Source of the DNA: Octopus bimaculoides | Lineage: Eukaryota | Direction: 5' to 3' | Assembly (NCBI RefSeq): GCF_001194135.2 | Contig: NC_068989.1 | Coordinates: 59,210,853-59,274,852, forward strand | DNA: 64,000 nt | In this document: positions 6,905 to 59,799 of the stretch, one piece after another | Numbering within the stretch: position 1 is the first letter of the stretch | Layout: every line of letters starts with the position of its first letter | Notes under the pieces: generated by a model | The model's database searches: none | What the model was told of the DNA's origin: nothing | Seen by the model: the letters and a program-made list of their open reading frames with translations, nothing else | Made by a program: the position numbers and the translations under genes

Positions 6905-9601
6905 GTAAGTAACGAATGAAAAATGTTTTATATCTTTTCAAGAATATTGACTACTATTACTACGTAATATAAGATTGTGTAGTTTGTTATATTTGGTTTA
7001 GAAGATAGAAAAAATTGGAGGCAGAAACATTAAGACATAGTTGTTACATTATCCAGAATAGACAGTGAGGATTCTTTCCATTCTCACATTCCCCTTCACT
7101 TTTCCACCTGTGGTCCAGCCTTTCAAAACCTATAAAGGTTGCTCGAACTGTACAGAAGAGACCCGACTGCGTAGAGACTGGCCAAATTACTGACGGTGTA
7201 AAAGCACCAAAAAGAATTTTTATTGTACCCCCTTATAAGGCTTCATAACAAACCGATTTTCTCCCACTTGCTGTAAGATGACGTACCAAACACATGAACG
7301 TTCAAGGTGTGACATGAATATTACATACCACAATTTTTCGGGTGGACACAGAATATGGTTACTCTTCCACAATTTGCAAAATACTGGATTCTACATATGC
7401 TTTTTGAAATTATACCGAAATTTTCATTATTATTGTTGAGGATGAAGAAAGTGATGTCGTGACAACCTCTTGTGAGAACGTACGGTCTTGTTTGTTCTGG
7501 TAGATTCTGTGAGAACAGACAGTAGCTTGCCGTCGGAAGTCTCACAGGGTCTCTTTCCGCACATTATAAACTTTGATACTTGGTTGTTAATTACTGTGGG
7601 AGACATGTAACATCTAAGTACTAATCTCAAGATCCTAGCTGCCCCCAACAGAGCAGTGTTTTGGGCTTGCTCTGCTTTCATGCCAATTCCGTTTTCTTTG
7701 ACATATTTCTCGAACTTGGTTGTTAGTGCTCCGAGTGTCCCTACAACTACTGGAATGACAGACACTCTCCTCATAGTCCACATTTTTGCAATTTCGTCTT
7801 TTAGTAGTCTGTACTTTTCAATCTTTTCTAGTTCTTTGTCACTTATGCGTGCATCTCCAGGTATTGAAATATCTATGATCTTAGTTTCCTTTTTTCTTTT
7901 ATCTACCACAACAATATCTGGTTTCCGAGTCTCGACTCCGAGTCACATTGGATTGTAAACTCCCACAGTATCTTATATTCCTTGTTCTAGGTGACTCCTT
8001 CTGGTTCATGTTCGTACCATTTCCATGCTCTGTTCAGACCGTACTTTTCACGTAGCCTCCAGTGAAGGAACTTAGCCACGTTATTGTGCGTCCTTTTGTG
8101 GTGTTTTGGGGTTAGCTTGCTACACTCACTCACAATATGTGAGATTGTTTCGTTTCTGCTGTCACACATTCTACAAAGGGGCGATTCGCTATTATTATCT
8201 ATTTCGAACTTGGTGTAATTAGTTCTCAGAGCTTGTTCCTGGGCTCTGCACATCAGTGCCTCAGTGTATCCTTTCAGATCACTTTCAGATATTGTCTTCT
8301 CCTTCGATTTCTTTGAGGTATTGCTCATGCAGTGGTTTCATTTTCCAGTTGTTTACTCTTTCTTTTTCATCCTGTTTCTTAGATGTTTGTGGGTTCATCG
8401 CATTTTTGGTAGGTATTATATTGTTAATTCTAACAGCGGCAAGCAAGGATTCATTCTGTTGTTTGATGCACCATCTAAGACTGTTCTTCTAGTTGACAAT
8501 ACAGATCTTGCATCCTATGAGACCTCTTCCACTCCTGTTTCTAGGCACATACAGTATCGCTTTTAGGGCGAAGTTCCATGTTAATTGTCATCACCTTTCT
8601 AGTTTTCCTGTCCATTTGCTCATGCTCGTTCTTCGTCCACATAACAACACCTGCGTCGTATCGCTTTAAAGAAACGGTCCCTGTGTTGCCCTGATTTTGT
8701 TTTTTTCCCATTGAGTCTACTTCCTATGAATAACTTGGTTCTTCTGAGATATTCTCGCCTAAAGCTTTCCTTGATTTCACTTTCCTTGATTTTGTCGTAT
8801 TCTAAAATCCCCAGATATTTATATCCATCAGTTTCAATATCCTTGATTTTATCGCCGTTGGATAGCTCTACACCACCATCAGACGACACTACTTTTCCTC
8901 TTTGTATTATAAGTATACCAAACTTTTTTGTCCCAAAGTCCATTCCGATATCCTTACTGAATATCTGCACTGTTGAAACTATGTCGTTTATTTCACGTTC
9001 GAACTTTCCAAAGATATTTAAATTCAAAGATCTTTAAATCATCCATATATAACAGATGTTTTAATTTTCCTCCACTTTTCAATGTGTACCCCGATGTCAC
9101 TTTCAGTAGTATCTGTGTGAGGAGTATCATCCAAATCACAGACAACAATTGTAATAGGCTATTTCCTTGAAATATGCCTCTCTTGATGTTAACCGTCGCC
9201 AAAAACTTTTCCACTTGAGGTTAACTCTGTAGTCCAGTTTTCCATTGATCTCCTAATAAAATTTGATGTTATCAGACACCTATACCAGCTCAAGACTTTT
9301 TAAAATCCAGGAATAGGGGACCATGTCATACGCTTTCTTATAATCGATCCACACCATACCCAGATTAGTATTTTCTTGCAGTGGTTCAGTACCATTCTGT
9401 CTATCAGAAGTTGGTCTTTTGTTCCTCAATGCTTACGACCTGGAACTTAACTGCGACGAATACTATATATGCTAGAACATTGTCTTTGCATATATGCTTA
9501 CATATATCCGTAATAAGCATTGTGGGGAGAGACATGTTCATATAGCATAAACGTATGCTTAGATGTATGCACACCTACATATATGTCTATTTGTACGTAT
9601 G

Positions 9602-9632
<31 letters not shown>

Positions 9633-12600
9633 CATTAGCACTGATTGCAAGGCCAGTGGATGAGCGTGGTATGTGTGTCAGTGTTTCTGCTTGCGACTAG
9701 GCAGAAGCATTCGAATTTTTTCAGCCTCGCTTTATACTGCATAGAGATAACCCTAAGTCATAGGTACCGGCATCATAACCAGTATAAGTTCTGTCACTGT
9801 TACCCCAATTACAAATATTTAATTGCTTTATTTACGCCACTAAAATCCATCTCTCTGTATATAACGCCGCAGACATCATCATCAATTCTTACAACATTAA
9901 TTTCCTCCTCGTCGTCATCATCATTAATATCNNNNNNNNNNNNNNNNNNNNNNNNNNNNNNNNNNNNNNNNNNNNNNNNNNNNNNNNNNNNNNNNNNNNN
10001 NNACCACCACTACCACTATCAAACTATCTTCCCCATTGCTCCACGTTAACAGCTTCAACTCCCAAGCCGCCGTCACGACATCACTTTCATCATCCTCAAC
10101 ATTGTCGTCCTTGCCCAATATCATTTCTATCATCATAACATCTCCACCAATACCACCACTATTCATATCACCACCACCCTCTAAAGGGAATGTTAATCCC
10201 GGAATTCTGATATTCTACCAAAACTAGTTTTCGTGTATCGACTTAGTTTGCTCAGAGCGGAATTAGTCTCTAAATATCACTAACAGGATTAAGTGAAGAC
10301 AGAAAAGTAAAGATTTACTGATCAGATCGACAATTGTCCACGATAAACCACATATAGCAGTTCTCCATTATTAACTAATGTTTAACATTAAACGTTGACC
10401 CCTTTCGATAATTCATGGTTTAGACTCTTCTGTATAGTGTCACATTAATGAAGTAAAAGAAGTGAGTTACGAAATTAAAAATTGTATCCTTTTACAGTGA
10501 AATATTGTTGATGAATGGAAACAGGTTTTTTTTTTCATTCTGTACGAAAACTAATCAATGTTATATTCTTTCTGTTACAGGTACATCTGTGTTTGCATTG
10601 TGCTCGAAATTCCACACTTGTTTAACATAGCTCACTGCGTGTGGGGTACCTCCTTCATTTGTGTCAAGAAATGGACAAAATGGCCAACTGTGTCACATCT
10701 TTGCACGGTATTTAATATATCAACACACAGAGAAATATTTAAGCGATATTTAATGATAAGGATAAAAAATCTAGTGTTGCATAAAATTGCTTTCTTTCTT
10801 TTTTTTCTTTTTGCGGCACCGACTTTGTCTAATGTTCCTTTCAACATTTTCAAAGGGTTGGTAAAATGAATTCCAGTCAAGCCCTACGTTAATTAAATTA
10901 ACCTACCTCTACCCTAAAAATTTATTGTGTTCAGTCACAGACAGGAAATTGATTTTTGTACGATACTGCTCCAAGACAAAATTTTCCTCATATAGGACCC
11001 AATATCGAATTAATATTGAGCTGCCTGATAATTTCGAGTTTCTTACCATTTATTTCAATCCTAATTTTTAACAGGTCAGTTGATAATAAGTTCTTCGTTC
11101 ACGACAAGAAGTCGAATGTATTTGACAACCCAATAGTTAATTATGGAAGCATTGTTTTCTATATTTACTAATTTTCTTATGCAAATGAGATACCATTTTT
11201 CTGAGAGCAATAATTTTATAATGGTGTTACCTGCACGTATGCACGCGCATATACATAGACAGTTGTATATGACTGATTTATAACACTAGTAATTCTTACA
11301 TGTCATTTAAAATTTCAAGTGTTGATTACATTAAACTATTATTGACCAATTGTTTTAGTAATCGTTTTTTTTTTTGGTATGTTTTAGTCAAGAGGGAAAG
11401 CAGGGCTCAAGATCCTATACAAGGCTTTCAAGACTGGTGAATTGGAGTAAGGAGGGTGTCCTTGAACCAGTGACTTAGTCTGAATTATTAGAACAGAACA
11501 GACCCGCTAATTATACCTAAGGTGCCAGGAAATGATGTGAAACTAAGCAACGGATTAAATCTATAACTATTGTGGACCATAGTAGGATTTAACTCTGAAT
11601 ATAAAAAGCTGGACCAAATACTGGAAGGCTTCTGGACCGAGATTTTATTGACCCTAGAACAAATACCACTTTAACGACTCTCTTCCTATAAAATATATTT
11701 GATACATGCCATATTTACAAGCATTAGTTCCTAACGTAGATGGTGTCAATGTACAACTTTCCATTTTTCTCTTCTACAAAGTGAAATGCTTTACTCAGTC
11801 AGACGGTTATATATTATTTGCACTACAGCGTTAGACCAAAATTTTACCACACAGTCCACCCTATTTAATACATAAAAATGTTTTTTAATCTTCCTTACTG
11901 AGTCTCCATTAGCCTTTGCAGGCACTCCACTACTAACGAGATGGTGTTAGTGTTGAGCTTAAACTGTTGCAGATCAACATACGTATGAGCAGGAAGAAGA
12001 TTCCAGAGGGTTGATATTTTGGAGAGGAAACAACCAGGTGTAGTAGTTAGAGCGTGACAGGGAGTGAGGCGGACATGACAGGGGTGACCAGAAATGGAGA
12101 GACAACTGGAGCGAGAGCGTCTGAGTGAAGGTGATACGAGAGCCACGAGCTTCGAGAAACAAGGGTTCTTATCGTCACGATAGAAAAAGGGAGAGGTGGG
12201 AGACAGTACACCAGTGGATCAGGCATTTTATTAAATTTTATTTCCTTCAATACCAAAGAGTCTAGTAGCTCTTCTCTGGATGCGGATGCAGTCCAGAATT
12301 TATGTATACCTATTAGTGGTTCTGTCCCTGATGTGAGAGCGGTATTCAACGCCAGGCCTCTCTGAAACCTTCTGCAGTGCCTGCAACTGTTAAGGTCTGA
12401 AATATTTTCTGACCAGAAAGAGAAGGATCAGTCCTAAGTTTACAATCTAATTTCATCAGTGATTCTCGGTGATAGCGAGGATAATAGTATTCAGAATGAC
12501 TTCTCACTTATATTTAGCAGAAGTGTTGTGCGATCGTGTTTCCTTGATATGTGCAGTGCTGTTAAAAGTGACAAGATTGGTATGCTACCCCAAACACACA

Positions 12601-15600
12601 CACACACTTGCGGATATTCTCAAAGTCCCGGTTCATGTAATCGATGCAGGTTTAGCTTACGGCGTTTAAGTTGCATGTTAGAGAACAATGAAAGAACATA
12701 TCGTTTGCATAAGAGTGGGTTACAGGATGTGGTGGAAAATAGGTCAATGATATGTAGAAGCAAGACATTTGAGGACAAAACCGAACCATGAGGCACACCG
12801 GAACTGATTGACGATGGGGCAGAAGGAACACCTACTATACATGTCATGATAGTGTGAACCGATAAGAAACTACTGATACAAAACCTAAGAGACCAGTAGG
12901 GCCTGAAATCGAGAAATTTTGAAATTAGCGTGCTAACATAGATTAAGGCTTGGTTAATGTCTGGGGCAACCAACATTCCTTTTATCGAACTTCCCTAAAT
13001 GAGAGCCTTCTGGTAAATAGCATAAAAGAGTAGTAGGTCTCTAGTGACCCTAGATTTTCGGAGAACCGTAATGTTGGTCACCATGGACAGAGTTTAAGAC
13101 GCAGTATTACGTCATTTGTTTCCATTACTGTAGAATATATTGTTTATATAGAATGTGTGAAAAATCTCGATGACACGACTTTTTCCTGTAGCAAAACACA
13201 AATTAAATAAGCGATTATTTTTCAGTCGGAAATCAAAATTGTGCTTTGGATTCGGTTTGCCAAGAATTTAGTCGCTTTATCTGAGACGTCTATAGTTCAA
13301 TATATTGATAACTTGAAATTTACATTTTAAGAGTCAGTTATCAATTTTGACCTGTTTACTTAACATTGTGAACAATTTCTGTTCTGCATTTCTTTTTATG
13401 AATTATCATTGCTGATATTGTAGGGTATTCTGGCCAGTTTGCTGGAAGTAGCCTGTTTGAGTGTACTCTTCATAGAGTTTGCTCCACTTTTTCCCGCCCA
13501 TATATTGCTATTGTTGTCTGGATCAGTGTACTCTGTGCCTGCTATAAACGAATATATTAAACAAAGGGGAATAACTAATGTAAGTATTTAGCTATTTTCT
13601 TCAACTTTTCTTTTTTATCTTTAAACAAAATATGGAAGTGTTTTTATCGGAGGAGAGACGAGATTTGGTCAGAAAATAATCAAGCATGTAACTAGAAAAG
13701 ATAACAAGTTTCGGTTATCTTCGAGTGTTTTTTTCCCATAATTATAAGCTATGAATATTGAGCTATCTAAAACTACACCTAACCATGCTAAGGCCCCAGA
13801 TGTGTCTACAGAGCATTTGACAATTGCCAGCAGCACTACTCCTACATGGACCTAAACTATCCACAACAAGCTTATAAGACATTACAAAAATACACAAAAC
13901 AGTACTCTCTAAATCATAACAGGTGATACTGGACCATACCTAATGACCAATTATTCAATGAAACAAAACTACTAAAAACTAAATACCAAGATATGCAAGA
14001 GGTATTGCTTGTTGCTCACAATACCTGTCACCATAGGAAAAAATCCCTCCAGATAAGCATATACTTATACAACACTGCAGTTACTACTACAATAACATAA
14101 GAATAAAGCTATTTCTCCCATTCATCCGAAGCAAATTCCAGATACCACACACACTCAATTATCATCAATAGCTACTCTGATCCGCAATACTCTGTAGGAA
14201 TGCATATTACCAGCAATAAGAGTTGAGGTACACCTTACCCACTTCGCCTATATTCAGCACCGGATGCAAGTGTATAGAAATAGTTTGAAAACGGAAAGTG
14301 CGCAAATCACTCAGGAATACACTCCATATGGTGGAGTGTGTAGTATGGTCCTCAATTCGGTGGAAACATCGTTCTAGAAGGAAACGAGCATGTAGTTTGG
14401 GCCTTGTCTATCGATCGACTATGGCGCACCATAGAACTGCTCAATTCAGACTAACTTGGGAAAACATCAGCAACAACAGTATATATTTGATTTATGTTTG
14501 ATGTGATCTCAGTGCTGAGTTGCAATCCTTCGCTAATCCCAGAAAAGACAAAAACATAACTGTCACAAAATATTTTAGCCTGAATCACAGCACGAATTTT
14601 TATATATATTAGGGTCCAAACAGGTTATAGTTTCGAAATGCCACTTAATTCAGTACCTGCAAGCCAACAGACTCTACGTAGTCGCTTGACTTACTAGATA
14701 TAACATTTAAATCTCCCACAGTCTTAAATAAATAAAGGCATAAATGATAATGCAAAAGAATTGGTAGATCACGTGTCTGCTCAATCAAAGGTTACTTTGA
14801 GTTAAAAAGCAATAATATCGGTACTAATGCCATCACCGCAACTATTATCATAGGGATTTTCAATTTTATAATTTTACACTTGTTAATTGAATGTATTCAA
14901 AATATTCTCTAACAATAATTTGTTTCAAACTTTTATCCTTTGTACATTTTAAATATTAATCAATGTTTCTGTTATGATAATATTGATAAAATGAAATCCA
15001 ATGCCGGTATATATACTTCATTTTTCTTTTTCAGAAAACAAAATTGTTTGAAGACGAATGTATTAATAACGGTGGCTTTAAAGTGTCCCCATCTCCCGAT
15101 CATCTAAAAACCAAATTTCCTTTAAAACCTGCCATATTTTGTTTGAGTATTTTGATACCATTAATTATATCTGGAATCCTTTTTACCTGGTCGCCATACA
15201 AACTTCATCTCCTACATGTTTTTCTCTTACCTATTATCCTCCTTCTATTATCCATTCTATGGACACCAAAAGTACAAGTGGATTTTTATCGTTCCTCGGA
15301 TGGTCGAATGGATAACCGCCGAAAAACCTCAATGATGTATGCAATTGTAAAAACAATCGCAGTTCCGTTTTGCATTTCAATTGTCCTCCTGACACGTTTT
15401 AAAGACCTGCGATCGTTATATTTTATTGATTTTATTTCTAATGGATTTCACCAGCTCTCCTATTTCCACGTGTATATCCTCGTGATCTTAATTTCTTTAG
15501 CCGGCATGTTTGTTGTCTTAACTGGACTTCTTTGTGCAAAGGTAACAGAAAAATTAGATGATTTCATCATTTTAAAGATAATATCATAAATTTGATGTTA

Positions 15601-18600
15601 GGCGAGATATTTATAACTAAAATAATTCCAAGAACTATATTGTTAGCATAGTTTGTATCGTATGAGAATGCGATTGTCTTTGGAAGAAATATTCCATCGT
15701 CCACCCTCGTTTTATCTTTAGTCTGGATACCACGGTTATTTTTCTGTGAAGTGATTCTCTTGCAACTCATGAGCCAGTGAGCAATGTTCTACGAGACTGA
15801 TTGATCTCATTAAAACTAATTCAGAGTTGTTTACAGTTTAAATACATTCTATTATATAGTTTTAACATTAAATACATTCTATTATATAGTTTTAGCATTA
15901 AATACATTCTATTATATAGTTTTAGCATCAAATATATTCTATAATATAGTTGTAGCATTATATAGTTTTAGAATTAAATACATCGAAAGCCTATAGTGAG
16001 ACTGTGGCACACCATAATTCTTTATATCCCAGAGACATTTTCCGATTAGTATTATATGAAGAATATTGATCTTCAGTTTCAATTTTATATTGTTGATATA
16101 GTTGTTAATACAATCCTTTCGGTTGAAAATAAAGAAGCTGACAAACTCAGTATGTCGACAACACTTTATATGGAATTCAGAATACATTGCTATTGTCCAA
16201 AGTGCCCTTTAGAACAGGTTATGCAGTACTTGAGTGTTTTTAGTCACCTAATTATGACAATATTCTAAGCACGACTATCAGAACTACCTTTTCTCTCAAT
16301 TAATTTTGCCGAGGTATTAAAGTAAATACTTATTGAACGTTTCCAGCTGATGGCTATAAAATTTATAGGCTGATAGGATTTCAAGCAAATGGACTTTTGC
16401 CTCGAAGGTGATAAAATGGCGGCATTCCATACTCACTTTAAATTATGAAGTGGGAGATTACGTGATCTAGTTGATTATTATCATCTAAAGTGATTTTTCG
16501 ATAGACAAATAAGTGTAACTATATCCTGAAGCTGTTTATCGAATATTTGAATTCAGATTTCAATGTTCAATTAGATTTCACAAAATGTTCATTAGATTTC
16601 ACACAATATTTGACCGTATTTGTCAAGTTAGTTGTGTGAAATAATTTAATAACTTTAACATTATGGTCCTAATTATAGAAATTACTGCCACAAGTTTTAA
16701 TCTTGCTTCTAGTATTCATCTTTAAAACATTCTCTCTCTTATATAGATGGGACTCACTACGACGGGTATGCTAATTCCATCAATGATGTCAATGCCGACA
16801 GTTATTGGAATCAACTTATTACAATGTGTATCAGTTGAGGAAGATTATTGCAACGACTATAATATTTGGATTATTGTATCATCCATTCTTGCGGCATTAG
16901 TTTGGCTTTTGCCATTATTAATCTACGGAGCAGCGTTTACGCGACCAAGCGACATCTTGCTGAAACCATTCCAAGAATCCTTTCTACAATTTAGTTGGAT
17001 TCCCCTTTTCCTTGACCAGTATTTACTACTTAATTATTACCCTGATGGTTTTGGCGACTCTCAGCAGTCTGAGATCTATGGTGACCTCAATACAGCGAAG
17101 TGCAAAAGTAAAGTATTTATCTGTACCACTATGTATAATGAGAAAGAAAGTGAAATGAAAAGACTTTTACAAAGTTTGAATAACGTAGCAAAATCACCAA
17201 ATCTACAATATGTTTACAAGGAAGCTCACATTTTTATGGATAACGGTTCAAAAGATAATCGCCTTACCAAGAACTCGATGATACTTATTTCGTTGATTAA
17301 ATCCCTTGATAATATAAGATTGAACTCTTTAAAAACGTATCTCACTCCGTATGGTATTCAAATGAACTGGACTTTAAGAAATGATTTCCAATGTTATGTA
17401 CATTTCAAGGATTGTCAGAAGTTTAAGGCAAAGAAACGCTGGAGTCAAGTGATGTATATGAATTATATTTTGAACTATAGATGTAAAATTTTACATTTCA
17501 CGCAAGATGCTAGGCAAACATTTCATACGATGGAAAGTGTGCCAGAATATTTGTTAGGTGATATAAAATGCACAGCTGATCGACTGCATAGCGACTCGTT
17601 GAAGCAAGATGAGACAAACAGAAAAATATCAGAAAATGAAAATTATACTGGGAAATCAATAAGAAGTAAAAAGAGACAGTCAAATCACTCCTCTGTTTTA
17701 AAGATGGAACTCGGAAAGTTACAATGTCTGTTAAAATCGAACTATAATGTTCACTATGAGAACATAGATGCCTCTTCCTGCAAGCATAAGATGCATTCGG
17801 AATATTCAAAAGCACCAATCATTCAGACCATATCGAATGTTTTACAATTATTAAATAAAAGGCAATATTCCAGATACATGACGGTAAATTCTGAGTTACC
17901 CTTTCAGATTACAAATGAAGAATCTTCAAGTGAAGAATCAGGGATTCAGTCAATAGCCAATACAATATCGGTAGACAGTTTGGAATTCTCTCCGGGAATT
18001 ACATCCGAAGATGATATAATAGATGCTTCCGGAAATGAAGATGAAAGCACAGATGTGTCCTCATCGAACGATGATCACACTATCATAAATAAGGAACCGG
18101 TAAATAGTTGTATAGAAAAGAATAATTCTAATTCTTTAACACTTCAGGTAAAGAACACTAGACAAATCATATCCCAGACTGACAGAACATCATCTGTTAG
18201 CAAAAAAGTTTCCTTTCCAATAATGTCCCCATTAGTGACATGTCTTGATAAATCTGCGCCTGTTCCATCTACCAACTGTCTCAGTCCAATTTGTAACTAT
18301 AGTTTTGACTTAACGCCAAAAGTTTTCATGATTGAAAAACCATTTTGGAATAGAAAGATGCAATATGATATGAAACCTAGCAGTAAAAGCACCAAACCAA
18401 CAGAAAACAAAAGAAATTCTCTGAATTCTTCGACAGAGCCAAAACCTTCTCCAAGAATACTTCCCATTTCTTATAAAGCTACTTCAGAAATCTCACAGAA
18501 CAAATCATCGTTGAAATCCAGTTATTTTGATGACTATACTTACATACTTGCTACGGACGCCGATATGGAATTTGACGACAAGAGTCTTGTTCGACTCATT

Positions 18601-21600
18601 GACCTTTGCAATCGTGATAAAAACATAGGAGGCGCTTGTGGTAGAACCTCGCCAAAAGGACACTGCAATACTCCGGTAGTCTGGTACCAAAAATTTGAAT
18701 ATGCTAAAGGTATATCAATGATTAAACTCACTTCTCTTTCCAGCGTTCACATACAATCAAATAGGAACACATACACACGTACACACTCATCAGACATAAA
18801 TATATCTGATGAGATGGATGTTTCCCACGCGTCCATGAAACTTTAGGTCATGTGGAGCTATGGCAAGCTGTTATTCTACATAACACACACGGAATCACAC
18901 ACACACATACACACACGCACAAGCACGCATGCACACACGCACTCACACACACAGCTGAACCAAGAGATTCAGTTCATTAATTCTCTTGTTAATTCATGAA
19001 TTAATTTTCATCATCTACTATAAACACATAAATGCCTTCTCTTTATGCGGTGGAATTGGACCAAAGACTAAAGTATTTTATTAAGTAGCATAACATTATG
19101 AGTAACAATGTTATGAGTTTCATTAGTGTAAAACTTACATTTTACTATATTAGCCTTGCATAATCTGAATGATAGATCCATTTTTGTCAGAAAGGTCACT
19201 TACAATTAAATTTAACGATACATAATTCTAATTTTTGCAATGGATGCAGCTATAAGTAATTAGCAAAATATTTAACAGTGAAAGTCGCAGTCGGTTCACA
19301 TAATTCAAAACAATATGGTCCAGTCAAAGCAATCGATTCAACTGAGTACAAGAAACTAAACCAGAATCGGCCGTTAGGTATCCCATTACTGGTACCGCCA
19401 AACTGTCAATATTGCAGTCTACATAAGGCAGTGAGGTGGTAGAATCGTTAGCACGCCGTGCAAAATGCTTGGCATCATTTCATACGTTTTTACGTTCTGA
19501 GTTCAAATTCCGCCGAGGTCGGTTTTGCCTTTCATCCTTTCGGGGTCGATAAAATAAGTACCAGTTGAGCACTGGAGTCAATGCAGTCGAATTACTCTCT
19601 ATCCCAGCGTTGCTGGCCTTGTGTCAAAATTTGAAATGAATATTAGTCCCTACCAAACTGTAAGTAGGTTCTATTCCTTCTGCGAGGAAAGCTACTTGAA
19701 ATACTCGTGGCACTCCGTCGGTTGCGACGACGAGGATTCCAGTTGGTCCGATCAACGGAACAGCCTGTTCATGAAATCAACGTGCAAGTGGCTGAGCACT
19801 CCACAGACACGTGTACACTTAATGTAGTTCTCAGGGAGATTCAGCGTGACATAGAGAGTGACGAAGCTGGCCCTTTGAAATACAGGTACAACAGAAACAA
19901 GAAGAAAGAGTGAGAGAAAGTTGTGGTGAAAGAGTACAGCAGGGTTCGCCACAACTCCCTTCCGGAGCCTCGTGGAGCTTTAGGTGTTTTTATCACAATA
20001 AACACTCACAACGCCCGGTCTGGTAATCAAAACAGCAATCCTACGACCGCCAGTCCGCTGCCCTAACCGATGGGCCATTGCGCCTCCACGCTACTTGAAA
20101 TAGATGGGAGCTCTATCGAGAGAGAAGATTAGTTTTTATTTGTTGAACGGCTCCGAATTTCAAACATTAATATTCCTTCTCTATGGACCTGCAAACGCAC
20201 TTACATCATTACCATTCCACATCATTATCATATAGCCAAACACTATACTGTTTATAATCTCCCTGATTTACAATTAAGACAACATATATAACATAAAATA
20301 ATAACAAACGATAAGATTACCTTTTTGACTGATTAACATATAATTTTCGGTTTTTAGATTTCTGGATGATCAAGAGCTCGCAAAATGTCATAGGCTGCGT
20401 CATGTGTTGTCCAGGCTGTTTCAGTTTGTATCGTGCCACAGCAATACAAGATGTCATGCATATGTATTGTGAACCAATTCAGTCGGAGTTTGACGTATTT
20501 GTCAAAGACCATGGTAAAATTCAGATACTTTAAGCAATTAGAATTCATTTGTTTTGTTTTCTGTTTTGATATATAATATTCATCAAATACGAATTACGTT
20601 ATATATAGTCGTTATATTGCTACTATAAAATTATAGTAGAGGATTAGATCAGAATCATAATGTGATATAGTTGTGCATAGAATATGTGTGCGTGTGAAGG
20701 AAAGTCGATTTAATATACAACTTTAATAATACTCAACTGTGAAAACAATTCATCATTGAATGGAAACTTATGAATTAGTAATAAACTGTCATGCAGGGAA
20801 ATGAAATGGAGGTTGTAAATTACAATACGGGCTCTCGCTTTGTAAGTTACACGAATTTTATTCCAGATTGTATTGCACTCATTTGTTTTGTTGATTAGTT
20901 TCTATCTACTTTCACTGAGCAGACTTATCAAAATCGTTCCGGCCATGCCATCCAGTTATTTTCTAGCACATTATATATTTAAGGATTCATTATCTAATGG
21001 TGAACTTTTCCAACGGTATGGTATGATTTAAGAAAGATTTAACTTATATATCAAGCTACCATACTCAGATATGCACAGTTACTAATATGTCAATGACATG
21101 AACTCCATAACTGCCAATACTCACTCGGAATAGCATATTGAGTCTCAGTAACAGAAACCATTAGGCTATAATCACAAAATATAGCACAAAACATATTCAA
21201 TTCTATGTGTATTATTTATATTCTCAGGAATTATTCTATTAGTATTAATAAGAATAATTGTTTTCTAGATAATTGATTTATTTTCTATATTTGATCTTTT
21301 GGCAGAGGCTTGCCGAATGTTAGGTATGCATTATCTACTATAGAAATTTCATTTTACGTCATTTATTTCTACACTTAAGAATTCAGTTTTGATAACCTAT
21401 TGAAACTACTACAATTACTTTGCATAACTCTTTACAACTATCAACATAACTGATTTTTTTCCACTTTGGAAATTTTAAAGCAGCATTGTAAATTTTCAAT
21501 ATTTATTAGGGAAGATTGTAGCTAAATGTAGTTAAAATATGTGAAGTTCTATAAACAAATTATCTGTTAAATATATTCCTTGTTTGCAGGTGAAGATCGC

Positions 21601-24600
21601 TGGTTATGTACCTTAATGATGTTAAAAGGCTGGAAGCTAGAATATTCGTCATATTCACACAACTCAACATTCTGTCCTGATAATTTTCTTGAATTTCTTA
21701 AACAGAGAAAGCGCTGGGTTCTCTCAGAAATGTCAAATTTAATTCTCGTTTTTGGCAACATAAGACGACTCACGCAAAACAATTCAACCTTCTCTTTAAT
21801 TTATATTATTTATATACTGCAAATGTTTCTGTTAGTGATGTTATCACCAGGAACAACTGTTGTTGTTCTCACAATCTCTTTAGATATCCTCTTCGGTTTA
21901 TCATGTCTATACACTACACCATTTTGCATTGGAAGTTTAATACTTTATTCTGTAATATGTTCCACAAAATCAATACAAGCCCAGTCAGCAGTGACTTCAG
22001 CAATTACCATTTTTCTTGGAGGCATTGTGCTTTCTGTTAGCGTTGGTTACATGAAATTCTTTGTGGTAGATACAATTGATGGTAAGTTTGCATGCATGCT
22101 TTCTAATTTTGCTTATTTTCCTAGTAATGCAATCAAACCAGAAATAAGCTTCTGGCGAACCGAGTCTTGGATGTAGTTGTGATTACCAATTTTATTTTAC
22201 TTTGTTTATGTCCTTAATACTTTTATAAAATGAATAAGTATCATAAAACATCCCTTAAATCTGGAGAATCGAATTTAGTCGAACACTTGAAATGATGCGT
22301 TGTATGACTACCTAATCAGAGAAACACCCTGTTTTTCAATCATTAATAAATCGAGTAATAAACAATTTAACAAGAGTATATGTCACGTGATAAAATTTTC
22401 ATGCTCTGATTTTATTGGCCAGATCTTCAGGACGGACAGCTTCAGTTCAAGCAATACTATTTAATTTTACTACTGATGACTGCTGTTTTATACGCTGCTT
22501 TAATACACCCCAAAGAAGCCTGGACTCTAATTCATGGTCTCACCTTTTTGGTTGTTTTCCCGGCAATGTACATTTTACTGCCATTTTATGCCGTTTCTAA
22601 TATTGTGGATCAACGATGGGGAACACGTGAAAGTGTAAGTGATATTTCATATCTTTATCTTAGCTATCGTTACTGAGTTGTTTCAGTTGATATACTGCAT
22701 TTTATGTCCGTTTCCATAATTCTAAGCGGACGAGACTACCAAATGTTTTACTCACGAGATCTTTACAACATAATGAAGTATTTTACAAGTATACAGTGAC
22801 TCCACTATTTCACAACAGGGATCTGTAATATCAACGAAAGGTGTTTTCTGATTACTGGATTGAGAGTTAAGTGCCATATGTTATGTACAACGTTTGTGAT
22901 GAGCTATGAACGAAAAGCATTTGGATTTAATGCAAGGTTTTGGGCAAATCAAACGTTGGGAAAAAATTTTTTTTTTTTAAGATACAGCTTTTCGGGTTTT
23001 ATTCGTAATTAAAAGGAAATCATCAAATACTACTTTCAAGCGTGTTATTTATTTAAGCAAATAGTTTACTATAGCTAACTAATGTTCTTTTGTATTTAGT
23101 TCATTTTAGCAAAGATATGTTTTTCTTGATGCTTGTAGTGGGACATTTTCTAAGATGGTCCTAGAAGTCTCTTAGCGAATAAGTGTCAAGTTACCAATTT
23201 GGAATGTACTTTGAAGTTATTTAGCACATAGAGAAGGTACTTATGGAAGCGAACGATCTTGTTTGACGGTAGCAAGTATGTCACATGTATAGTAATCTGC
23301 GTATTTTATAGTTGATGTAGCAAAAAAGGTTGGTAGTGATCTCACTAAAGTGGCTTGTTACTGGACTTAGGAACAGTTTATGGATGCTCTGTTGCATACG
23401 AAAGGAACAAGACTGAGATACAGAGCGGTAACTTTTGAAAGTGAAAGTAAAAGATTTACTCGGATAGAATTTTTGACAAATAGATCATGTCAAGTTTTTT
23501 TATTAAAAGATAGCAGGACTGAGAAAGATCGTAGCAATTTTAGAATCATTGTAAAGCAAATGAAAGTTGTAGAAAGTGCAGAGTTACCGGATAAAATGTA
23601 GTAGAATAAAAAAAAAGCTCTATGGTTGTCTTGGATTAGAATTGCCTAGGCTTGATGGAACACTGCAACAAACGATGATTCAAATGTGAGGAGAAATTGG
23701 TGGATTTCCTGGTATTTCAAAACGAAATTCGAGTTGCTGCTGCATAGACAGCAGAGTCGAAGAAACTGCTATATTAGCAGTGTTAGGCTTAATAAGGAGA
23801 GAAGAAGAAAATTGTGGTACGTTGAGAATCAGCGTAATTATAATGCATTGACGTAAAGATGTGGGGTTTATCAATGTGGGTCCGGTGAATTGGTTAAATA
23901 TATGAAAATAGCCCACAAAGAGTTCGTTGTAATTGATCCCATCTTGATAACCATACTGGTGGTTTGTTGATTGAACTCAGCGGAGAAGAGACTGAGGATA
24001 AAACAAGTTCAGTTCAGTGAAGAAGCGTGGATGTATTAGATTCAGGTAGAGGACGGAAGATTGGAAAATGATTAAAGGCTGATAGATCGTTACTATGGGA
24101 GATGACGGTGTACAGTGCTGAGAGATTTCATATCCATTATCAAGAAGAGATACGAGGATCCAGGAGGGAAAGCAAACCAGATGAAAGGATATGTGAGAGG
24201 ACAGGGAAGCGGTAAGAGATGATATGAAACTATTGAGCTAGCTGCAGATAAGGGCAGTGGAGAGGTTTGGGAGAATATTCCTGTTTAAAAAACTTGTAAG
24301 AGAATACAAGGGGAGATTCAAAGTCTGTTTATATGATATGGTTAGTGTCCGTAAAAAATAGTGTGGAAGACCGAATAACTTAATGGGCCTTGAGTATCTT
24401 GAGGTAGAAGTAGGTGTTGCTGCGTTACCGGACAACTTCTCAGTGAAAGTCAGCCCACCACACAATAACTGCAAATTCTTTGCTCACCGGTTCTATAATC
24501 TCGACAAAGGATGTGCAGATGTTTTTGAAATTAAGGCGTCTGATATTCTTTTTATAATTAAATTATATTCGGATCCTCCAATATAAAATCTATTTCCTCT

Positions 24601-24908
24601 ACGCTCTGAATCTAGGATCTATAGTGAGTGGTCGTATCTTGACGAATATTTCTCCTTAATAAACTATGTAAAGTGTATTTGGAAAGACTAATTAATCCTC
24701 CCCTTTCTCTCTCTCTCTCACTCACTCTCTTTATTTCCTTCTCTCTCTCTCTCTCTCTTTATATATATATATATNNNNNNNNNNNNNNNNNNNNNNNNNN
24801 NNNNNNNNNNNNNNNNNNNNNNNNNNNNNNNNNNNNNNNNNNNNNNNNNNNNNNNNNNNNNNNNNNNNNNNNNNNNNNNNNNNNNNNNNNNNNNNATATA
24901 TATACATA

Positions 24909-24982
<74 letters not shown>

Positions 24983-25660
24983 GTGCCATAAACTGCTATT
25001 TATTTGTTTTCTATAGGATAGTGATAGCACAAGCTGTTACCGACATATGTCTGACAGATTGTTCGCAAAAGAGAAAAATATCAACAAGAGACAAGGTGAG
25101 ATAAATGATAAATTTGTTATTATTAATAAAAAAAATTACATATTTTCATACCAAAAATCAATTTATTGAGTCTTATGCATTATTCAGTAATAAATAGTAG
25201 TTGGTAAGAAATCTCCTTTCTTCTATTTATAATAGAAATACCTGAATCGCAGCAATTCAATGGTGAACGTGACCTTGAAACATGCGACCCAGCCAAAACT
25301 ATTTTGCTGCAGAAAGAACAAACATTTTGGGAAGACCTTCGTGTCTCTATTCTAGGGACTGATGTCAATTTAGGCACTGATCAAGTAACTCTAAAACTTC
25401 GGCTTAAAATATTGCGCAATCGGTTGGTGGGAATTTTGCTGCTCTGTAACATAATTTGGGCTTGTTTGCTCAGTAGTCTTTATTTGACCATCTCGAAACA
25501 CGACACTATCTTTGGAATCATAACTTGTTCAGTCTATAGTTTTTCACTGCTTATACAATTAATTGGATTGACTGCCCACAAATGTGATTCTTTCTTCAGA
25601 GAGTTTGTCATTCGAACATTTGGAAAAAAACACCCTATCTGGATTCATCGAAAAGATTAA
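6789..25660 (+). CDS. CHS: Chitin synthase (GT2), spliced gene, 9 supported coding exons; true 5' end not resolved
   Basis: Exons 6789-6904, 10581-10707, 15035-15541, 16747-18709, 20358-20513, 21590-22081, 22423-22634, 25017-25095 and 25236-25660 are GT-AG bounded, phase-compatible and sum to 4077 nt (1358 aa + TAA). Chitin synthase motifs: KKRWSQVMYM, DAD, GGACGR, YQKFEY, CPGCFSLYR, GEDRWLCTL, QRKRW, WGTRE. Symbol is family-level only. Confidence 0.93.
7435..9445 (-). mobile_element. 5'-truncated, decayed R4/Dong-like non-LTR retrotransposon (RT, CCHC, restriction-like endonuclease)
   Basis: Fragmented ORFs: RGIFQG..L, LLYMDDLK (RT), CRMC..ETISHIVSEC (zinc knuckle) and RKPDIVVVDK..IIDISIP (RLE). 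The 3' end abuts AATAATAAT. Confidence 0.88.
10581..10707 (+). CDS. CHS: Chitin synthase exon (YICVCIVLEIPHLFNIAHCVWG...HLCT)
   Basis: Acceptor ttctttctgttacag, donor ACG|gtattt; phase 2 to 0, compatible with both neighbours. Confidence 0.7.
11890..13090 (-). mobile_element. Decayed CR1-like LINE RT fragment
   Basis: SGVPHGSVL (cf. GVPQGSVL), EYRSHI, IQRRATRL, STLWNLLP..FK; frameshifts and stops. Confidence 0.78.
15035..15541 (+). CDS. CHS: Chitin synthase multi-TM exon
   Basis: Acceptor tttttctttttcag, donor AAG|gtaaca, 507 nt, phase 0-0; several hydrophobic helices. Confidence 0.85.
15838..15983. repeat. 30-bp minisatellite, about 4.5 copies
   Basis: Unit TTAAATACATTCTATTATATAGTTTTAGCA; the first three copies are nearly identical. 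Confidence 0.92.
16747..18709 (+). CDS. CHS: Chitin synthase large catalytic exon (1963 nt)
   Basis: Acceptor ctctcttatatag|ATG, donor AAAG|gtatat. Contains FICTTMYNE, HIFMDNG, KKRWSQVMYM, ATDADM, GGACGR and WYQKFEYAK. Confidence 0.93.
18801..18854 (+). ncRNA. Degenerate hammerhead ribozyme motif in a chitin synthase intron
   Basis: UAUAU-CUGAUGA-G-AUGGAUG/CGUCCAU-GAAAC-UUUAG-GUC-AUGUG. Core intact, but C11.1 is missing and stem I is weak (two G-U pairs). Confidence 0.5.
19425..19636 (+). mobile_element. SINE family A copy
   Basis: Same consensus as 5042-5237. Confidence 0.8.
19704..20089 (-). mobile_element. tRNA-derived SINE (family C) with a 13-bp TSD
   Basis: A/B-box head; GCTACTTGAAATA at 19691-19703 and 20090-20102; homologous to 38446-38803. 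Confidence 0.85.
20358..20513 (+). CDS. CHS: Chitin synthase exon (DFWMIKSSQNVIGCVMCCPGCFSLYR...KDH); missed by the ORF track
   Basis: Acceptor tcggtttttag, donor CATG|gtaaaa; phase 1-1; continues FEYAK into the CPGCFSLYR motif. Confidence 0.93.
21590..22081 (+). CDS. CHS: Chitin synthase exon with GEDRW and QRKRW
   Basis: Acceptor ccttgtttgcag, donor GATG|gtaagt; phase 1-1. Confidence 0.93.
22423..22634 (+). CDS. CHS: Chitin synthase exon ending in WGTRES
   Basis: Acceptor ttttattggccag, donor AGT|gtaagt; phase 1-0. Confidence 0.92.
23290..24380 (+). mobile_element. Highly decayed LINE-like (possibly RTE) remnant
   Basis: Purine-rich tract with weak resemblance to the 42455-42870 segment around 23370-23700. 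Confidence 0.3.
25017..25095 (+). CDS. CHS: Chitin synthase short linker exon (DSDSTSCYRHMSDRLFAKEKNINKRQ)
   Basis: Acceptor ttgttttctatag, donor CAAG|gtgaga; phase 0-1 bridges the flanking exons. Confidence 0.8.
25236..25660 (+). CDS. CHS: Chitin synthase terminal exon (...EQTFWEDLR...HRKD*)
   Basis: Acceptor ttctatttataatag, in frame with ORF 25304-25660; E..FW motif and two hydrophobic helices; TAA at 25658-25660. Confidence 0.85.
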
Positions 25661-50917: not shown

Positions 50918-50967
<50 letters not shown>

Positions 50968-51366
50968 NNNNNNNNNNNNNNNNNNNNNNNNNNNNNNNNN
51001 NNNNNNNNNNNNNNNNNNNNNNNNNNNNNNNNNNNNNNNNNNNNNNNNNNNNNNNNNNNNNNNNNNNNNNNNNNNNNNNNNNNNNNNNNNNNNNNNNNNN
51101 NNNNNNNNNNNNNNNNNNNNNNNNNNNNNNNNNNNNNNNNNNNNNNNNNNNNNNNNNNNNNNNNNNNNNNNNNNNNNNNNNNNNNNNNNNNNNNNNNNNN
51201 NNNNNNNNNNNNNNNNNNNNNNNNNNNNNNNNNNNNNNNNNNNNNNNNNNNNNNNNNNNNNNNNNNNNNNNNNNNNNNNNNNNNNNNNNNNNNNNNNNNN
51301 NNNNNNNNNNNNNNNNNNNNNNNNNNNNNNNNNNNNNNNNNNNNNNNNNNNNNNNNNNNNNNNNNN

Positions 51367-51397
<31 letters not shown>

Positions 51398-59650: not shown

Positions 59651-59799
59651 TTGTTTATGAATAAAAGAAGGAAGCCAAATATGTCAGCAAATAGGATGCT
59701 AGGATGCTACACATGATTTTCTCATACAAGCCTGGTTGATCATTTCAACAGGAAAATTGATAGATTGGAGAACTGTTTTCCAGCAACATACTAAAATAT
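59651..59799 (-). other. Candidate non-coding 5'UTR exon of GALNT
   Basis: Acceptor ctgttgcag at 59800 and donor CAA|gtgagt at 59650, upstream of the 59343 acceptor. Splice signals only. Confidence 0.3.

What the first reader, a model, noticed from the sequence alone, without database searches (positions are those of the whole stretch)
17482..18531. About 350-aa Ser/Asn/Lys-rich insert inside the chitin synthase catalytic domain
Seen: 350 uninterrupted codons of low-complexity polar sequence (e.g. EESSSEESG, DVSSSNDD, many SP/TP sites) separate KKRWSQVMYMNYILNYR from DYTYILATDAD within one exon. Established: in animal chitin synthases I recall these motifs being only a few tens of residues apart. 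Inference: a large disordered cytosolic loop near the UDP-GlcNAc site that could act as a phospho-regulatory or zymogen-like module. An open frame this long in AT-rich DNA argues against a plain intron.
Basis: partly seen in the sequence, partly recalled or inferred. Interest (0 to 1): 0.7.

Follow-up and report, generated by a model that had tools for sequence, protein, structure and literature searches.

The report
Disordered insert inside octopus chitin synthase
An octopus chitin-making enzyme carries a real, translated, roughly 350-residue floppy loop in the middle of its catalytic domain, but related brachiopod and mollusc enzymes carry loops of 89-436 residues at the same spot, so this is a poorly documented family trait and not a one-off oddity.

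Summary
Window 17482-18531 is 350 open codons inside one exon (16747-18709) of a chitin synthase gene. They separate KKRWSQVMYMNYILNYR from DYTYILATDAD. The window is Octopus bimaculoides, because UniProt A0A0L8HFA0 is an exact substring of my gene model.

- **Transcribed:** RNA contigs from 8 runs of 3 octopus species run through the segment. They stop exactly at the exon's splice sites and show no internal junction.
- **Selected:** the frame is intact in four octopods, all indels are in frame, and dN/dS is 0.28-0.36 (bootstrap CI below 1).
- **Structure:** AlphaFold2 gives a confident chitin synthase fold on both sides. Residues 269-586 of the exon are disordered except for two conserved helices.
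- **Not unique:** the spacer is 16-49 residues in cnidarian, sponge, nematode, arthropod and fish enzymes. It is 89-436 residues in a bootstrap-supported brachiopod and mollusc clade.
- **Origin:** the insert sequence matches nothing else among 1.84 billion representative proteins.

Most likely it is a cytosolic regulatory or docking loop, topologically like the plant CesA plant-conserved region. Its function is untested. Public O. bimaculoides and O. vulgaris gene models are truncated at or inside it. I found no paper describing it.

The parts
16747..18709 (+). Large coding exon of the chitin synthase gene. It encodes transmembrane helices, the first half of the GT-A domain, the insert, the DxD strand and GGACGR...WYQKFEYAK.
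   Evidence: RNA contigs of runs X1, X2-X8 end exactly here and continue into neighbouring exons. Splice sites are ..tatag|ATGGGA and CTAAAG|gtatat.
17221..17250 (+). EAHIFMDNGS, the first conserved Asp motif (D1) of the GT2 fold
   Evidence: Nearly invariant E159, H161, F163 and D165 in alignment A1; coordinates.
17431..17481 (+). KKRWSQVMYMNYILNYR, the conserved helix that bounds the insert on the N-terminal side
   Evidence: Nearly invariant K229-M238 in A1; start of AlphaFold2 helix 230-263.
17482..18531 (+).
   Evidence: Retained in RNA. dN/dS 0.28-0.36, CI below 1.
17482..17535 (+). First 18 residues of the insert. They are predicted to continue the KKRWSQVMYM helix.
   Evidence: AlphaFold2 helix 230-263. 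The equivalent helix in P0019 is 124-167.
17551..18504 (+). Predicted disordered core (exon residues 269-586)
   Evidence: pLDDT below 50 for 269-316, 331-359 and 366-586; block means are 25-35.
17659..17679 (+). Conserved basic motif IRSKKRQ
   Evidence: At least 6 of 7 residues invariant in four octopods.
17689..17742 (+). Conserved predicted helix 1 (SSVLKMELGKLQCLLKSN)
   Evidence: AlphaFold2 helix 315-330. Conserved in octopods. The homologous helix 212-235 in P0019 has pLDDT 71-87. Motif ELxxLxxLL is shared with P0004, P0007, P0017 and P0020.
17812..17868 (+). Conserved predicted helix 2 (APIIQTISNVLQLLNKRQY)
   Evidence: AlphaFold2 helix 356-374. The homologous helix 266-288 in P0019 has pLDDT about 82-85. 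Conserved in octopods.
17887..17955 (+). Most conserved island, NSELPFQITNEESSSEESGIQSI (acidic Ser cluster 1, CK2-type consensus)
   Evidence: A 23-residue, nearly invariant block in four octopods. SEESSxE(D/E) is shared with P0004, P0017 and P0020.
18004..18075 (+). Acidic Ser/Asp-rich stretch SEDDIIDASGNEDESTDVSSSNDD (cluster 2; net charge -10 in a 25-residue window)
18211..18234 (+). Conserved short motif SFPIMSPL
18298..18324 (+). Conserved short motif YSFDLTPKV (YNYSFDLxPK is shared with P0017 and P0020)
18439..18440 (+). Site of an in-frame 15-nt (5-codon) length difference: related octopus species carry CAATATCATCAATTT here
   Evidence: RNA contigs of organisms B and C. Same indel in the O. 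vulgaris and Logan orthologue alignments.
18532..18573 (+). DYTYILATDADMEF, the beta strand carrying the DxD (TDAD) metal and UDP-binding motif. It bounds the insert on the C-terminal side.
   Evidence: Invariant T603, D604, D606 and F609; AlphaFold2 strand 598-604.
10594..10706 (+). Upstream coding exon. The 3' end is fixed by RNA; the 5' end is approximate.
   Evidence: The loose end of the X1 contig maps at 10677-10706.
13424..13579 (+). Coding exon
   Evidence: X1 contig junction 13579 to 15035, GT..AG.
15035..15541 (+). Coding exon (N-terminal transmembrane region)
20358..20513 (+). Coding exon (DFWMIKSSQN...CCPGCFSLYR switch-loop region)
   Evidence: Also present in UniProt A0A0L8HFA0.
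21590..22081 (+). Coding exon with GEDRW and QRKRW
22423..22634 (+). Coding exon
25017..25095 (+). Coding exon
25236..25660 (+). Last coding exon through the stop codon
   Evidence: The C-terminal 502 residues are identical to P0121.

Best explanation
**Shown.** The segment is a translated, selectively maintained and mostly disordered insertion in the cytosolic GT-A catalytic domain of a non-myosin, TDAD-type chitin synthase of Octopus bimaculoides. It lies between the first conserved Asp motif with the KKRWSQVMYM helix and the beta strand carrying the DxD motif. All catalytic motifs are intact: CTTMY, FMDNG, TDAD, GGACGR, CCPGCF, GEDRW, QRKRW and WGTRE. An enlarged loop at this site is a shared derived trait of one brachiopod and mollusc chitin synthase clade. 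In this gene's closest relatives (octopods and unnamed sequences) it reaches about 290-440 residues. In this gene's lineage it contains a helix extension, a basic patch, two conserved helices about 25-30 residues apart, two acidic Ser clusters and a long, weakly constrained tail with a few short conserved motifs.

**Inferred.** The loop does not take part in catalysis. It projects from the cytosol-facing base of the GT domain and most likely serves as a docking or regulatory region. The acidic Ser clusters would act as CK2-type phosphorylation-dependent sites, and the helices would act as protein-protein contacts, either with partners or between synthase subunits. Such contacts would control trafficking, assembly or activity. 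[quoted passage not shown]
For: **Transcription**
- A 3683-nt spliced RNA contig of run X1 covers 16745-18709 without a gap and joins the neighbouring exons.
- Contigs from 7 further RNA-type runs of two related species cover the insert and both its borders with no joint.
- A spliced contig from a more distant species, P0004, retains a 287-residue insert.

**Coding constraint**
- No stops and only in-frame indels in four octopods.
- dN/dS is 0.275 (CI 0.15-0.47) and 0.355 (CI 0.24-0.54). It stays below 1 when the conserved islands are removed.
- Seven conserved islands were found.
- An octopod-insert HMM detects P0020 (25.8 bits) and P0019 (13.7 bits), against a maximum of 10.2 bits for shuffled sequences.

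**Structure**
- pLDDT is above 90 on both sides and 25-35 in the insert, with two helices.
- The same two helices are predicted at pLDDT 71-87 in the distant homologue P0019.
- The folded part matches solved chitin synthases, for example CaChs2 7stm at E = 7e-16.

**Clade trait**
- Spacer survey.
- The long-spacer set is recovered as a split in 200 of 200 NJ bootstraps.
- Spacers across the clade are Ser-rich (13.8% against 7.8% in the rest of the protein) and poor in hydrophobic residues (30% against 47%). An acidic S/T cluster occurs in 27 of 42 spacers against 4 of 42 in the rest of the proteins.

**Analogy**
- The plant CesA plant-conserved region lies between the first two conserved Asp residues. 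It consists of two antiparallel helices joined by a linker of about 20 residues, and it stabilises the trimer (PMC8306620).
Against: - No functional data exist.
- Sequence similarity of the insert fades beyond the nearest relatives. Paralogue and bivalve spacers score at noise level.
- Length varies 89-436 residues.
- The C-terminal 150 residues of the insert have dN/dS of 0.35-0.57 with a CI reaching about 1.
- The hydrophobic moments of the two helices do not exceed those of shuffled sequences, except weakly for helix 2.
- Helix confidence in the octopus model itself is only 40-56 pLDDT.
- Phosphorylation is inferred from consensus sites alone.
- Contigs cannot exclude a minor isoform that skips the insert. 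The only raw-read RNA runs of this species (X20-22) do not express the gene.
Confidence: 0.55

Rival explanations
1. Tolerated filler. The site is a permissive surface loop that has inflated by neutral insertion and slippage. The sequence is translated but has no specific function, and the constraint only reflects the need to stay soluble, unstructured and free of stop codons.
For: - Spacer length varies 89-436 residues.
- No detectable sequence homology between the inserts of paralogues or of distant taxa.
- dN/dS in the insert is 2-4 times that of the flanks in the more divergent comparisons.
- The tail of the insert is nearly unconstrained.
- No match to any other protein family.
Against: - dN/dS is clearly below 1 even outside the conserved islands.
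- A 23-residue, nearly invariant block and two helices are conserved from Octopus to Argonauta and recognisable in a far more distant group.
- In my sample no member of the long-spacer clade has reverted to a short loop.
Confidence: 0.3
2. Oligomerisation module. The two conserved helices form a hairpin that mediates contacts between synthase subunits, as the plant-conserved region does in plant CesA trimers, and so sets how many chitin chains emerge together.
For: - Same topological position, between the first Asp motif and DxD.
- Same element count as the plant-conserved region: two helices with a linker of 25-30 residues.
Against: - No sequence similarity to plant CesA; phmmer of the insert finds only octopod chitin synthases.
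- Helix packing could not be examined because no coordinates or PAE were available.
- The helices are not detectably conserved in paralogues or bivalves.
Confidence: 0.15
3. Autoinhibitory or zymogen-like plug. The loop folds back over the active site and is removed or displaced by proteolysis or phosphorylation to activate the enzyme.
For: - It is adjacent in sequence to DxD.
- From my own knowledge, not checked here: trypsin activation has been reported for fungal and insect chitin synthases.
- A conserved basic patch, IRSKKRQ, is present.
Against: - By GT-A topology the loop is anchored at the end of the strand opposite to DxD.
- No part of it is predicted to dock on the catalytic pocket with any confidence.
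- The conserved elements are helices and acidic clusters, not a substrate-mimicking segment.
Confidence: 0.07
4. Artefact. The segment is a retained intron or exitron, a mis-assembly, or part of a decaying pseudogene.
For: - The public O. bimaculoides model (P0121) starts just after the insert and the O. vulgaris model (P0003) starts inside it. Gene predictors therefore did not join the two halves.
- The DNA is AT-rich like the surrounding introns (GC 0.32-0.36).
Against: - Spliced RNA contigs in three species run through it, and no joints appear in 8 runs.
- A genomic DNA contig of the same species is collinear at single-copy depth (X14).
- P = 2.8e-12 for the open frame.
- The frame is kept in four genomes.
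- All catalytic motifs are intact.
Confidence: 0.02

Closest known systems
Canonical animal chitin synthases (cnidarian and sponge TDAD-type; ecdysozoan and vertebrate LDGD-type)
   Same: Same enzyme family, same motif order and same fold.
   Different: Their RWSQVMY-to-DxD spacer is 16-49 residues (Nematostella 18, nematodes 21-26, beetle 27, fish 37-39). It is 361 here when measured the same way.
Brachiopod and mollusc TDAD-type chitin synthase paralogues (Lingula, Mytilus, Ostrea, Haliotis, Batillaria; Octopus and Argonauta paralogues)
   Same: Same clade (200 of 200 NJ bootstraps), same insertion site, and the same Ser-rich, acidic, hydrophobic-poor composition.
   Different: Spacers are 89-284 residues and show no detectable sequence similarity to this insert. 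The two helices and the SEESS block are recognisable only in this gene's closest relatives (octopods and unnamed sequences).
Plant cellulose synthase (CesA) plant-conserved region and class-specific region
   Same: Lineage-specific insertions in the cytosolic GT2 domain of a processive polysaccharide synthase. The plant-conserved region lies between the first two conserved Asp residues and consists of two helices joined by a linker of about 20 residues. The class-specific region is variable and partly disordered (PMC8306620).
   Different: There is no sequence homology and the enzyme subfamily differs. The plant-conserved region is a compact, conserved fold, whereas most of this insert is disordered. 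No role in oligomerisation has been shown here.
Molluscan myosin-chitin synthase ArCS1 (Atrina rigida)
   Same: A molluscan chitin synthase with low-complexity, low-confidence regions in AlphaFold models (bioRxiv 10.64898/2026.08.31.748318).
   Different: ArCS1 has an N-terminal myosin motor and a DGD motif, and its low-complexity region lies after a C-terminal transmembrane helix. The window gene has TDAD, and no myosin motifs occur anywhere in the window.

Membership tests
Processive GT2 chitin synthase | Ordered catalytic motifs: first Asp motif (FxDxG), DxD, GxxCGR, (S/C)PGCF switch loop, GEDRW, QxxRW, WGTRE | tested here: met
   All are present in order in the spliced model. T603, D604 and D606 are invariant in a 91-sequence alignment.
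Processive GT2 chitin synthase | Fold matches solved chitin synthases | tested here: met
   Foldseek best hits are CaChs2 7stm (E = 7e-16), ScChs1 and PsChs1, all at probability 1.0. A profile search of PDB sequences hits the same entries at E = 2e-35.
Processive GT2 chitin synthase | Makes chitin from UDP-GlcNAc | not testable with these tools
   This needs an enzyme assay.
Metazoan type I chitin synthase sensu Zakrzewski et al. 2014 (clade holding the sponge and cnidarian enzymes) | Groups with sponge and cnidarian chitin synthases rather than with ecdysozoan, vertebrate or myosin-linked ones | tested here: met
   The TDAD versus xDGD split is recovered in 200 of 200 NJ bootstraps. The best non-lophotrochozoan named hit is Nematostella (47% identity). 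This is distance-based only, with no ML or Bayesian tree.
Metazoan type I chitin synthase sensu Zakrzewski et al. 2014 (clade holding the sponge and cnidarian enzymes) | C-terminal SAM domain(s), present in most members | tested here: inconclusive
   The C-terminus ends about 12 residues after the last long predicted helices, and no separate small helical bundle is apparent. No domain-profile search was available.
Lophotrochozoan myosin-fused chitin synthase (ArCS1 type) | N-terminal myosin motor domain (GESGAGKT P-loop, DIxGFE switch II) and a DGD motif | tested here: not met
   No P-loop match in any of the six frames of the window. The only switch-II-like match (DIFGFL at 59685, minus strand) is outside the gene. 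The DxD motif is TDAD. The gene's 5' end may lie beyond the window.
Plant CesA plant-conserved region | Insertion between the first and second conserved Asp residues of the GT2 domain | tested here: met
   FMDNG at 17221-17250, insert at 17482-18531 and TDAD at 18532-18573. The definition is from PMC8306620.
Plant CesA plant-conserved region | Two antiparallel helices forming a compact, conserved domain at a trimer interface | tested here: inconclusive
   Two helices with a 25-30-residue linker are predicted. Their packing and any interface could not be examined.
Plant CesA plant-conserved region | Sequence homology to the plant region | tested here: not met
   phmmer of the insert against 1.84 billion representatives returns only two octopod chitin synthases.
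Spliceosomal intron or exitron | Transcripts that skip the segment at GT..AG borders | tested here: not met
   No joints inside 16747-18709 in 8 RNA-type runs, while the flanking introns are removed. Contigs can miss rare isoforms.
Spliceosomal intron or exitron | No coding constraint (stops, frameshifts, dN/dS near 1) | tested here: not met
   No stops, in-frame indels only, and dN/dS of 0.28-0.36 with a CI below 1.
Intrinsically disordered region with short linear motifs | Low predicted order, polar compositional bias, and fast evolution punctuated by short conserved islands | tested here: met
   pLDDT 25-35. 61% of residues are S, T, N, K, E, D, Q or P, and 29% are hydrophobic. 41% of columns are invariant against 69-92% in the flanks, with seven islands.
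Transposon-derived or domain-capture insertion | Similarity to other proteins or repeats, or multicopy DNA | tested here: not met
   No other protein family is hit. No repeats. Genomic contig depth equals that of the flanks.

The most novel reading that the evidence does not exclude
[quoted passage not shown] Its conserved helices and phosphorylatable acidic clusters would control how synthase units are trafficked and assembled into higher-order complexes, and so influence chitin fibril architecture in structures such as beak, radula, stylet or gladius, and sucker lining. Processive polysaccharide synthases of plants and of lophotrochozoans would then have independently inserted regulatory or assembly modules at the same position of the GT2 fold.
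Probability: 0.15. Interest if true: 0.7.

Novelty: new variant of a known kind. Interest (0 to 1): 0.35.

Why it matters
- **Open question in the field.** Chitin synthase structures exist only for fungi and an oomycete. Animal enzymes are structurally uncharacterised, and how they are trafficked, regulated and grouped is unknown. A 90-440-residue, selectively maintained loop inserted in the catalytic domain of a whole lophotrochozoan clade is an obvious handle for these questions. It also parallels the plant cellulose synthase inserts.

- **Practical consequence for annotation.** The insert breaks automated gene models. The public O. bimaculoides protein A0A0L8HFA0 starts right after it. The O. 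vulgaris model starts inside it and also lacks one exon. Catalogues of molluscan chitin synthases built from such models will under-count or truncate this family.

- **Limit on the finding's importance.** The finding is not unique to this gene, and no function has been shown.

Tried and rejected
- **Insert-only word-indexed search.** The protein search returned nothing. It also missed known orthologues, so this negative is uninformative. I replaced it with an exhaustive phmmer search.

- **PDB searches.** A PDB sequence search with the whole exon gave no hit. The profile search aligns only downstream of the insert. The insertion point could therefore not be mapped residue by residue onto a solved structure.

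- **Raw-read RNA runs.** The runs of this species (X20-22) have essentially zero depth on the gene. Junction-read quantification was not possible and only assembled contigs could be used.

- **Repeats.** Searches for tandem, direct and inverted repeats inside the insert found nothing meaningful. Expansion by recent internal duplication is not supported.

- **Myosin motor.** None found in the window.

- **Amphipathicity of the helices.** The hydrophobic moment does not exceed shuffled sequences for three of four helices, so I do not call them amphipathic.

- **Homology with other spacers.** Paralogue and bivalve spacers score at noise level against the octopod-insert HMM.

- **Long multi-frame open frames at 50.8-51.5 kb.** These are runs of N flanked by (AT)n, that is assembly gaps or masking.

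- **Literature.** Searches found no description of this insert. Zakrzewski 2014 shows a clipped alignment and does not discuss it. The 2026 ArCS1 preprint discusses a different low-complexity region.

- **Taxon identity.** The tools did not give the taxa of the unnamed long-spacer sequences (P0004-P0021).
Full report
**What is in the sequence**

The + strand carries one open frame from 16747 to 18846 (699 codons), the longest stop-free stretch in any frame of the 64-kb window. It contains the chitin synthase motifs KVFICTTMYNE, EAHIFMDNGS, KKRWSQVMYMNYILNYR (17431-17481), DYTYILATDADMEF (18532-18573), GGACGR and WYQKFEYAK. Exactly 350 codons (17482-18531) lie between the helix motif and the DxD strand.

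With the local base composition (A 0.38, T 0.27, G 0.16, C 0.18) a stop is expected every 14 codons. P(no stop in 350 codons) is 2.8e-12, and none of 20,000 shuffles stayed open. The other five frames hold 14-38 stops each.

The composition is Ser 16.6%, Lys 8.9% and Asn 7.7%, with balanced charge (43 K+R, 42 D+E). Entropy is 4.00 bits against 4.13 in the flank, and there are no repeats, so the segment is polar-biased rather than low-complexity. It has only 5 SP/TP sites but 15 S/T-x-x-D/E sites.

**It is exon, not intron**

- A 3683-nt contig of RNA-type run X1 (same species, 0 mismatches) covers 16745-18709 without a gap. It continues upstream into 15035-15541, 13423-13579 (GT..AG junction) and an exon ending at 10706. 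It continues downstream into 20356-20512 and 21589-22081.
- Introns have no coverage in that run, so it is RNA.
- Seven further RNA-type runs from two related species (X2-X8, about 95% identity) give contigs that cross both borders of the insert and tile most of it. They stop exactly at 16745 and 18709, with loose ends that match the neighbouring exons. None of them shows a joint inside the exon.
- A DNA run of the same species is collinear through the exon borders at single-copy depth (X14).
- These runs are assembled contigs, so a rare skipping isoform cannot be excluded. The only raw-read RNA runs of the species do not express the gene.

**Gene model and species**

Adjusting the contig ends to GT..AG gives these exons: about 10594-10706, 13424-13579, 15035-15541, 16747-18709, 20358-20513, 21590-22081, 22423-22634, 25017-25095 and 25236-25660. 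They yield 1329 residues from 13424 to the stop. All catalytic motifs are intact, including CCPGCFSLYR, GEDRW, QRKRW and DQRWGTRE.

UniProt A0A0L8HFA0 (Octopus bimaculoides 'chitin synthase', 502 residues, P0121) is an exact substring of this model (residues 828-1329). The window is therefore O. bimaculoides, and my 3' exon structure is independently corroborated.

That public model starts at the Met of DADMEF, immediately after the insert. The O. vulgaris model P0003 starts at a Met inside the insert (MELGKLQ...) and lacks exon 20358-20513. Only the Argonauta hians model (P0002, partial) contains the insert. No myosin motor motifs occur in the window.

**Conservation**

The whole exon is a single intact frame in O. 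vulgaris (92% amino-acid identity), in a Logan contig of another octopus (85%) and in Argonauta hians (61%).

| Comparison with the window | Insert dN/dS | Flank dN/dS |
|---|---|---|
| O. vulgaris | 0.275 | 0.271 |
| Logan contig | 0.355 | 0.148 |
| Argonauta | 0.329 | 0.091 |

These values come, where all indels are in frame. Codon bootstraps give insert CIs of 0.15-0.47 (O. vulgaris) and 0.24-0.54 (Logan contig), which never reach 1. The result holds after the conserved islands are removed. The last 150 residues are the least constrained, at 0.35-0.57.

Across the four octopods 41% of insert columns are invariant, against 69% and 92% in the flanks. Seven islands stand out:

- IRSKKRQ
- SSVLKMELGKL
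- SKAPIIQTISNV
- NSELPFQITNEESSSEESGIQSI
- NEDESTDVSSS
- SFPIMSPL
- YSFDLTPKV

Several of these recur in much more distant sequences (P0004, P0007, P0017, P0019, P0020; 33-36% identity over the exon, inserts of 287-436 residues). An HMM of the octopod insert scores P0020 at 25.8 bits and P0019 at 13.7 bits, against a maximum of 10.2 bits for 820 shuffled spacers. All other spacers score at noise level.

An exhaustive phmmer search of the insert against 1.84 billion representative proteins finds only the two octopod orthologues. The insert is therefore not a captured domain or a transposon fragment.

**Structure**

AlphaFold2 on residues 222-1329 with a 91-sequence alignment gives pLDDT above 90 for the GT core on both sides and for most transmembrane helices. 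Within the insert, in exon residue numbering:

- The KKRWSQVMYM helix is predicted to extend to residue 263.
- Residues 269-586 have pLDDT 25-35.
- The exceptions are two helices, 315-330 and 356-374, at pLDDT 40-56.

In the distant homologue P0019 the same two motifs are predicted as helices 212-235 and 266-288 at pLDDT 71-87, separated by 30 residues. Their hydrophobic moments are not clearly above those of shuffled sequences.

Foldseek places the model with solved chitin synthases: CaChs2 at E = 7e-16, then ScChs1 and PsChs1, followed by hyaluronan and cellulose synthases.

The loop enters the strand YILATDA at its N-terminal end and DxD sits at the C-terminal end. By GT-A topology the loop should therefore emerge on the side of the sheet away from the active site.

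**How unusual is it?**

I measured the distance from RWSQVMY to the xxLxxDxD strand in about 200 homologues.

| Group | Spacer (residues) |
|---|---|
| Nematostella | 18 |
| Paramuricea | 19 |
| Ephydatia | 20 and 43 |
| Nematodes | 21-26 |
| Mites | 24-26 |
| Beetle | 27 |
| Fish | 37-39 |
| Molluscan LDGD-type enzymes | 23-36 (Pomacea 80) |
| Lingula | 89 |
| Mytilus, Tegillarca | 122-127 |
| Pinctada | 150 |
| Haliotis | 160 |
| Oysters, Octopus and Argonauta paralogues | 194-205 |
| Batillaria | 284 |
| About 20 closest relatives of this gene | 184-436 |

The remaining rows all belong to the TDAD-type brachiopod and mollusc clade.

In NJ trees built on the GT core without the spacer, the long-spacer sequences form one group. 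That split is recovered in 200 of 200 bootstraps, as is the TDAD versus xDGD split. The enlargement is therefore best read as one ancient event followed by lineage-specific growth.

Across 42 long spacers the shared properties are compositional:

- Ser is 13.8% against 7.8% in the rest of the protein.
- Hydrophobic residues are 30% against 47%.
- 27 of 42 spacers carry a cluster with at least 9 of 12 residues being S, T, D or E, against 4 of 42 for the rest of the proteins.

**Mechanism**

Shown: the segment is a translated, constrained and mostly disordered cytosolic loop with two conserved helices and conserved acidic Ser clusters, inside an otherwise intact chitin synthase.

Inferred: it acts as a regulatory or docking region, with phosphorylation-dependent contacts and helix-mediated contacts that affect trafficking, assembly or activity.

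The nearest precedent is plant cellulose synthase. Its plant-conserved region also lies between the first two conserved Asp residues. It consists of two antiparallel helices joined by a linker of about 20 residues, and it stabilises the CesA trimer. The class-specific region of CesA is variable and partly disordered (PMC8306620). This is an analogy and not homology.

The rivals are a neutral permissive loop, an oligomerisation hairpin, an autoinhibitory plug and an artefact. The last is essentially excluded.

**Literature**

- Zakrzewski et al. 2014 (PMC3942024) classify animal chitin synthases and show clipped alignments, but do not mention the insert.
- A 2026 preprint on Atrina ArCS1 discusses a different low-complexity region in a DGD-type, myosin-fused enzyme.
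- Other searches found nothing on this feature.

**Verdict**

The feature is real and apparently undescribed, but it is a clade-wide trait of a known enzyme family and no function has been demonstrated. Interest is moderate to low.

Noticed in passing
window 18532-25660 versus P0121; 17704 onward versus P0003: Public gene models are broken at the insert. The O. bimaculoides UniProt entry A0A0L8HFA0 begins at the Met of DADMEF, right after the insert. The O. vulgaris model begins at a Met inside the insert. RNA contigs show a single gene in which the upstream transmembrane and GT-domain exons are spliced to the exons covered by those models.
   Followed up: yes
window 20358-20513: This 156-nt exon encodes DFWMIKSSQN...CCPGCFSLYR, the switch-loop region. 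It is present in RNA contigs and in the O. bimaculoides model. It is absent from the O. vulgaris model P0003, which jumps from EYAKG to EDRWLC.
   Followed up: partly
window 18439/18440: Related octopus species carry an extra 15 nt here (CAATATCATCAATTT, 5 codons, ...EPISSISKPSPR...) relative to the window. It is an in-frame length polymorphism between species inside the insert.
   Followed up: yes
window 40722-41114 (-) and 58713-59204 (-): These are exons of a polypeptide GalNAc-transferase gene on the minus strand (PDB hits to GalNAc-T9, T1 and T2 at E = 4e-26). The O. vulgaris locus has a gene with Glycos_transf_2 and Ricin_B_lectin domains on the minus strand downstream of the chitin synthase, so synteny is conserved.
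   Followed up: partly
window 19388-20196 and 24531-25121: RNA-contig depth reaches 1e4-1e5 here, with many chimeric joints, in all species examined. These are highly repeated elements or microsatellites inside the chitin synthase introns, not part of the gene.
   Followed up: no
window 11000-13353: Low-depth (about 2.5x) contiguous X1 contigs cover the intron upstream of exon 13424-13579, whereas other introns have none. This could be unspliced pre-mRNA or an unannotated transcript.
   Followed up: no
window about 4150, 9930, 24780-24900, 27600, 50960-51370, 57780-58030 and 62400-62700: Runs of N (assembly gaps or masking) flanked by (AT)n or (TATG)n microsatellites create spurious long ORFs in several frames.
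   Followed up: yes
window 7430-9027 (-): Two ORFs of 135-159 residues on the minus strand lie in the intron upstream of exon 10594-10706. They look like fragments of a mobile element, but there was no PDB sequence match and they were not characterised.
   Followed up: partly
window 41240-41797: A His/Arg-rich ORF on the plus strand and a Met/Thr-rich ORF on the minus strand are produced by a long CAY/CGY-type triplet microsatellite in an intron of the GalNAc-transferase gene.
   Followed up: no
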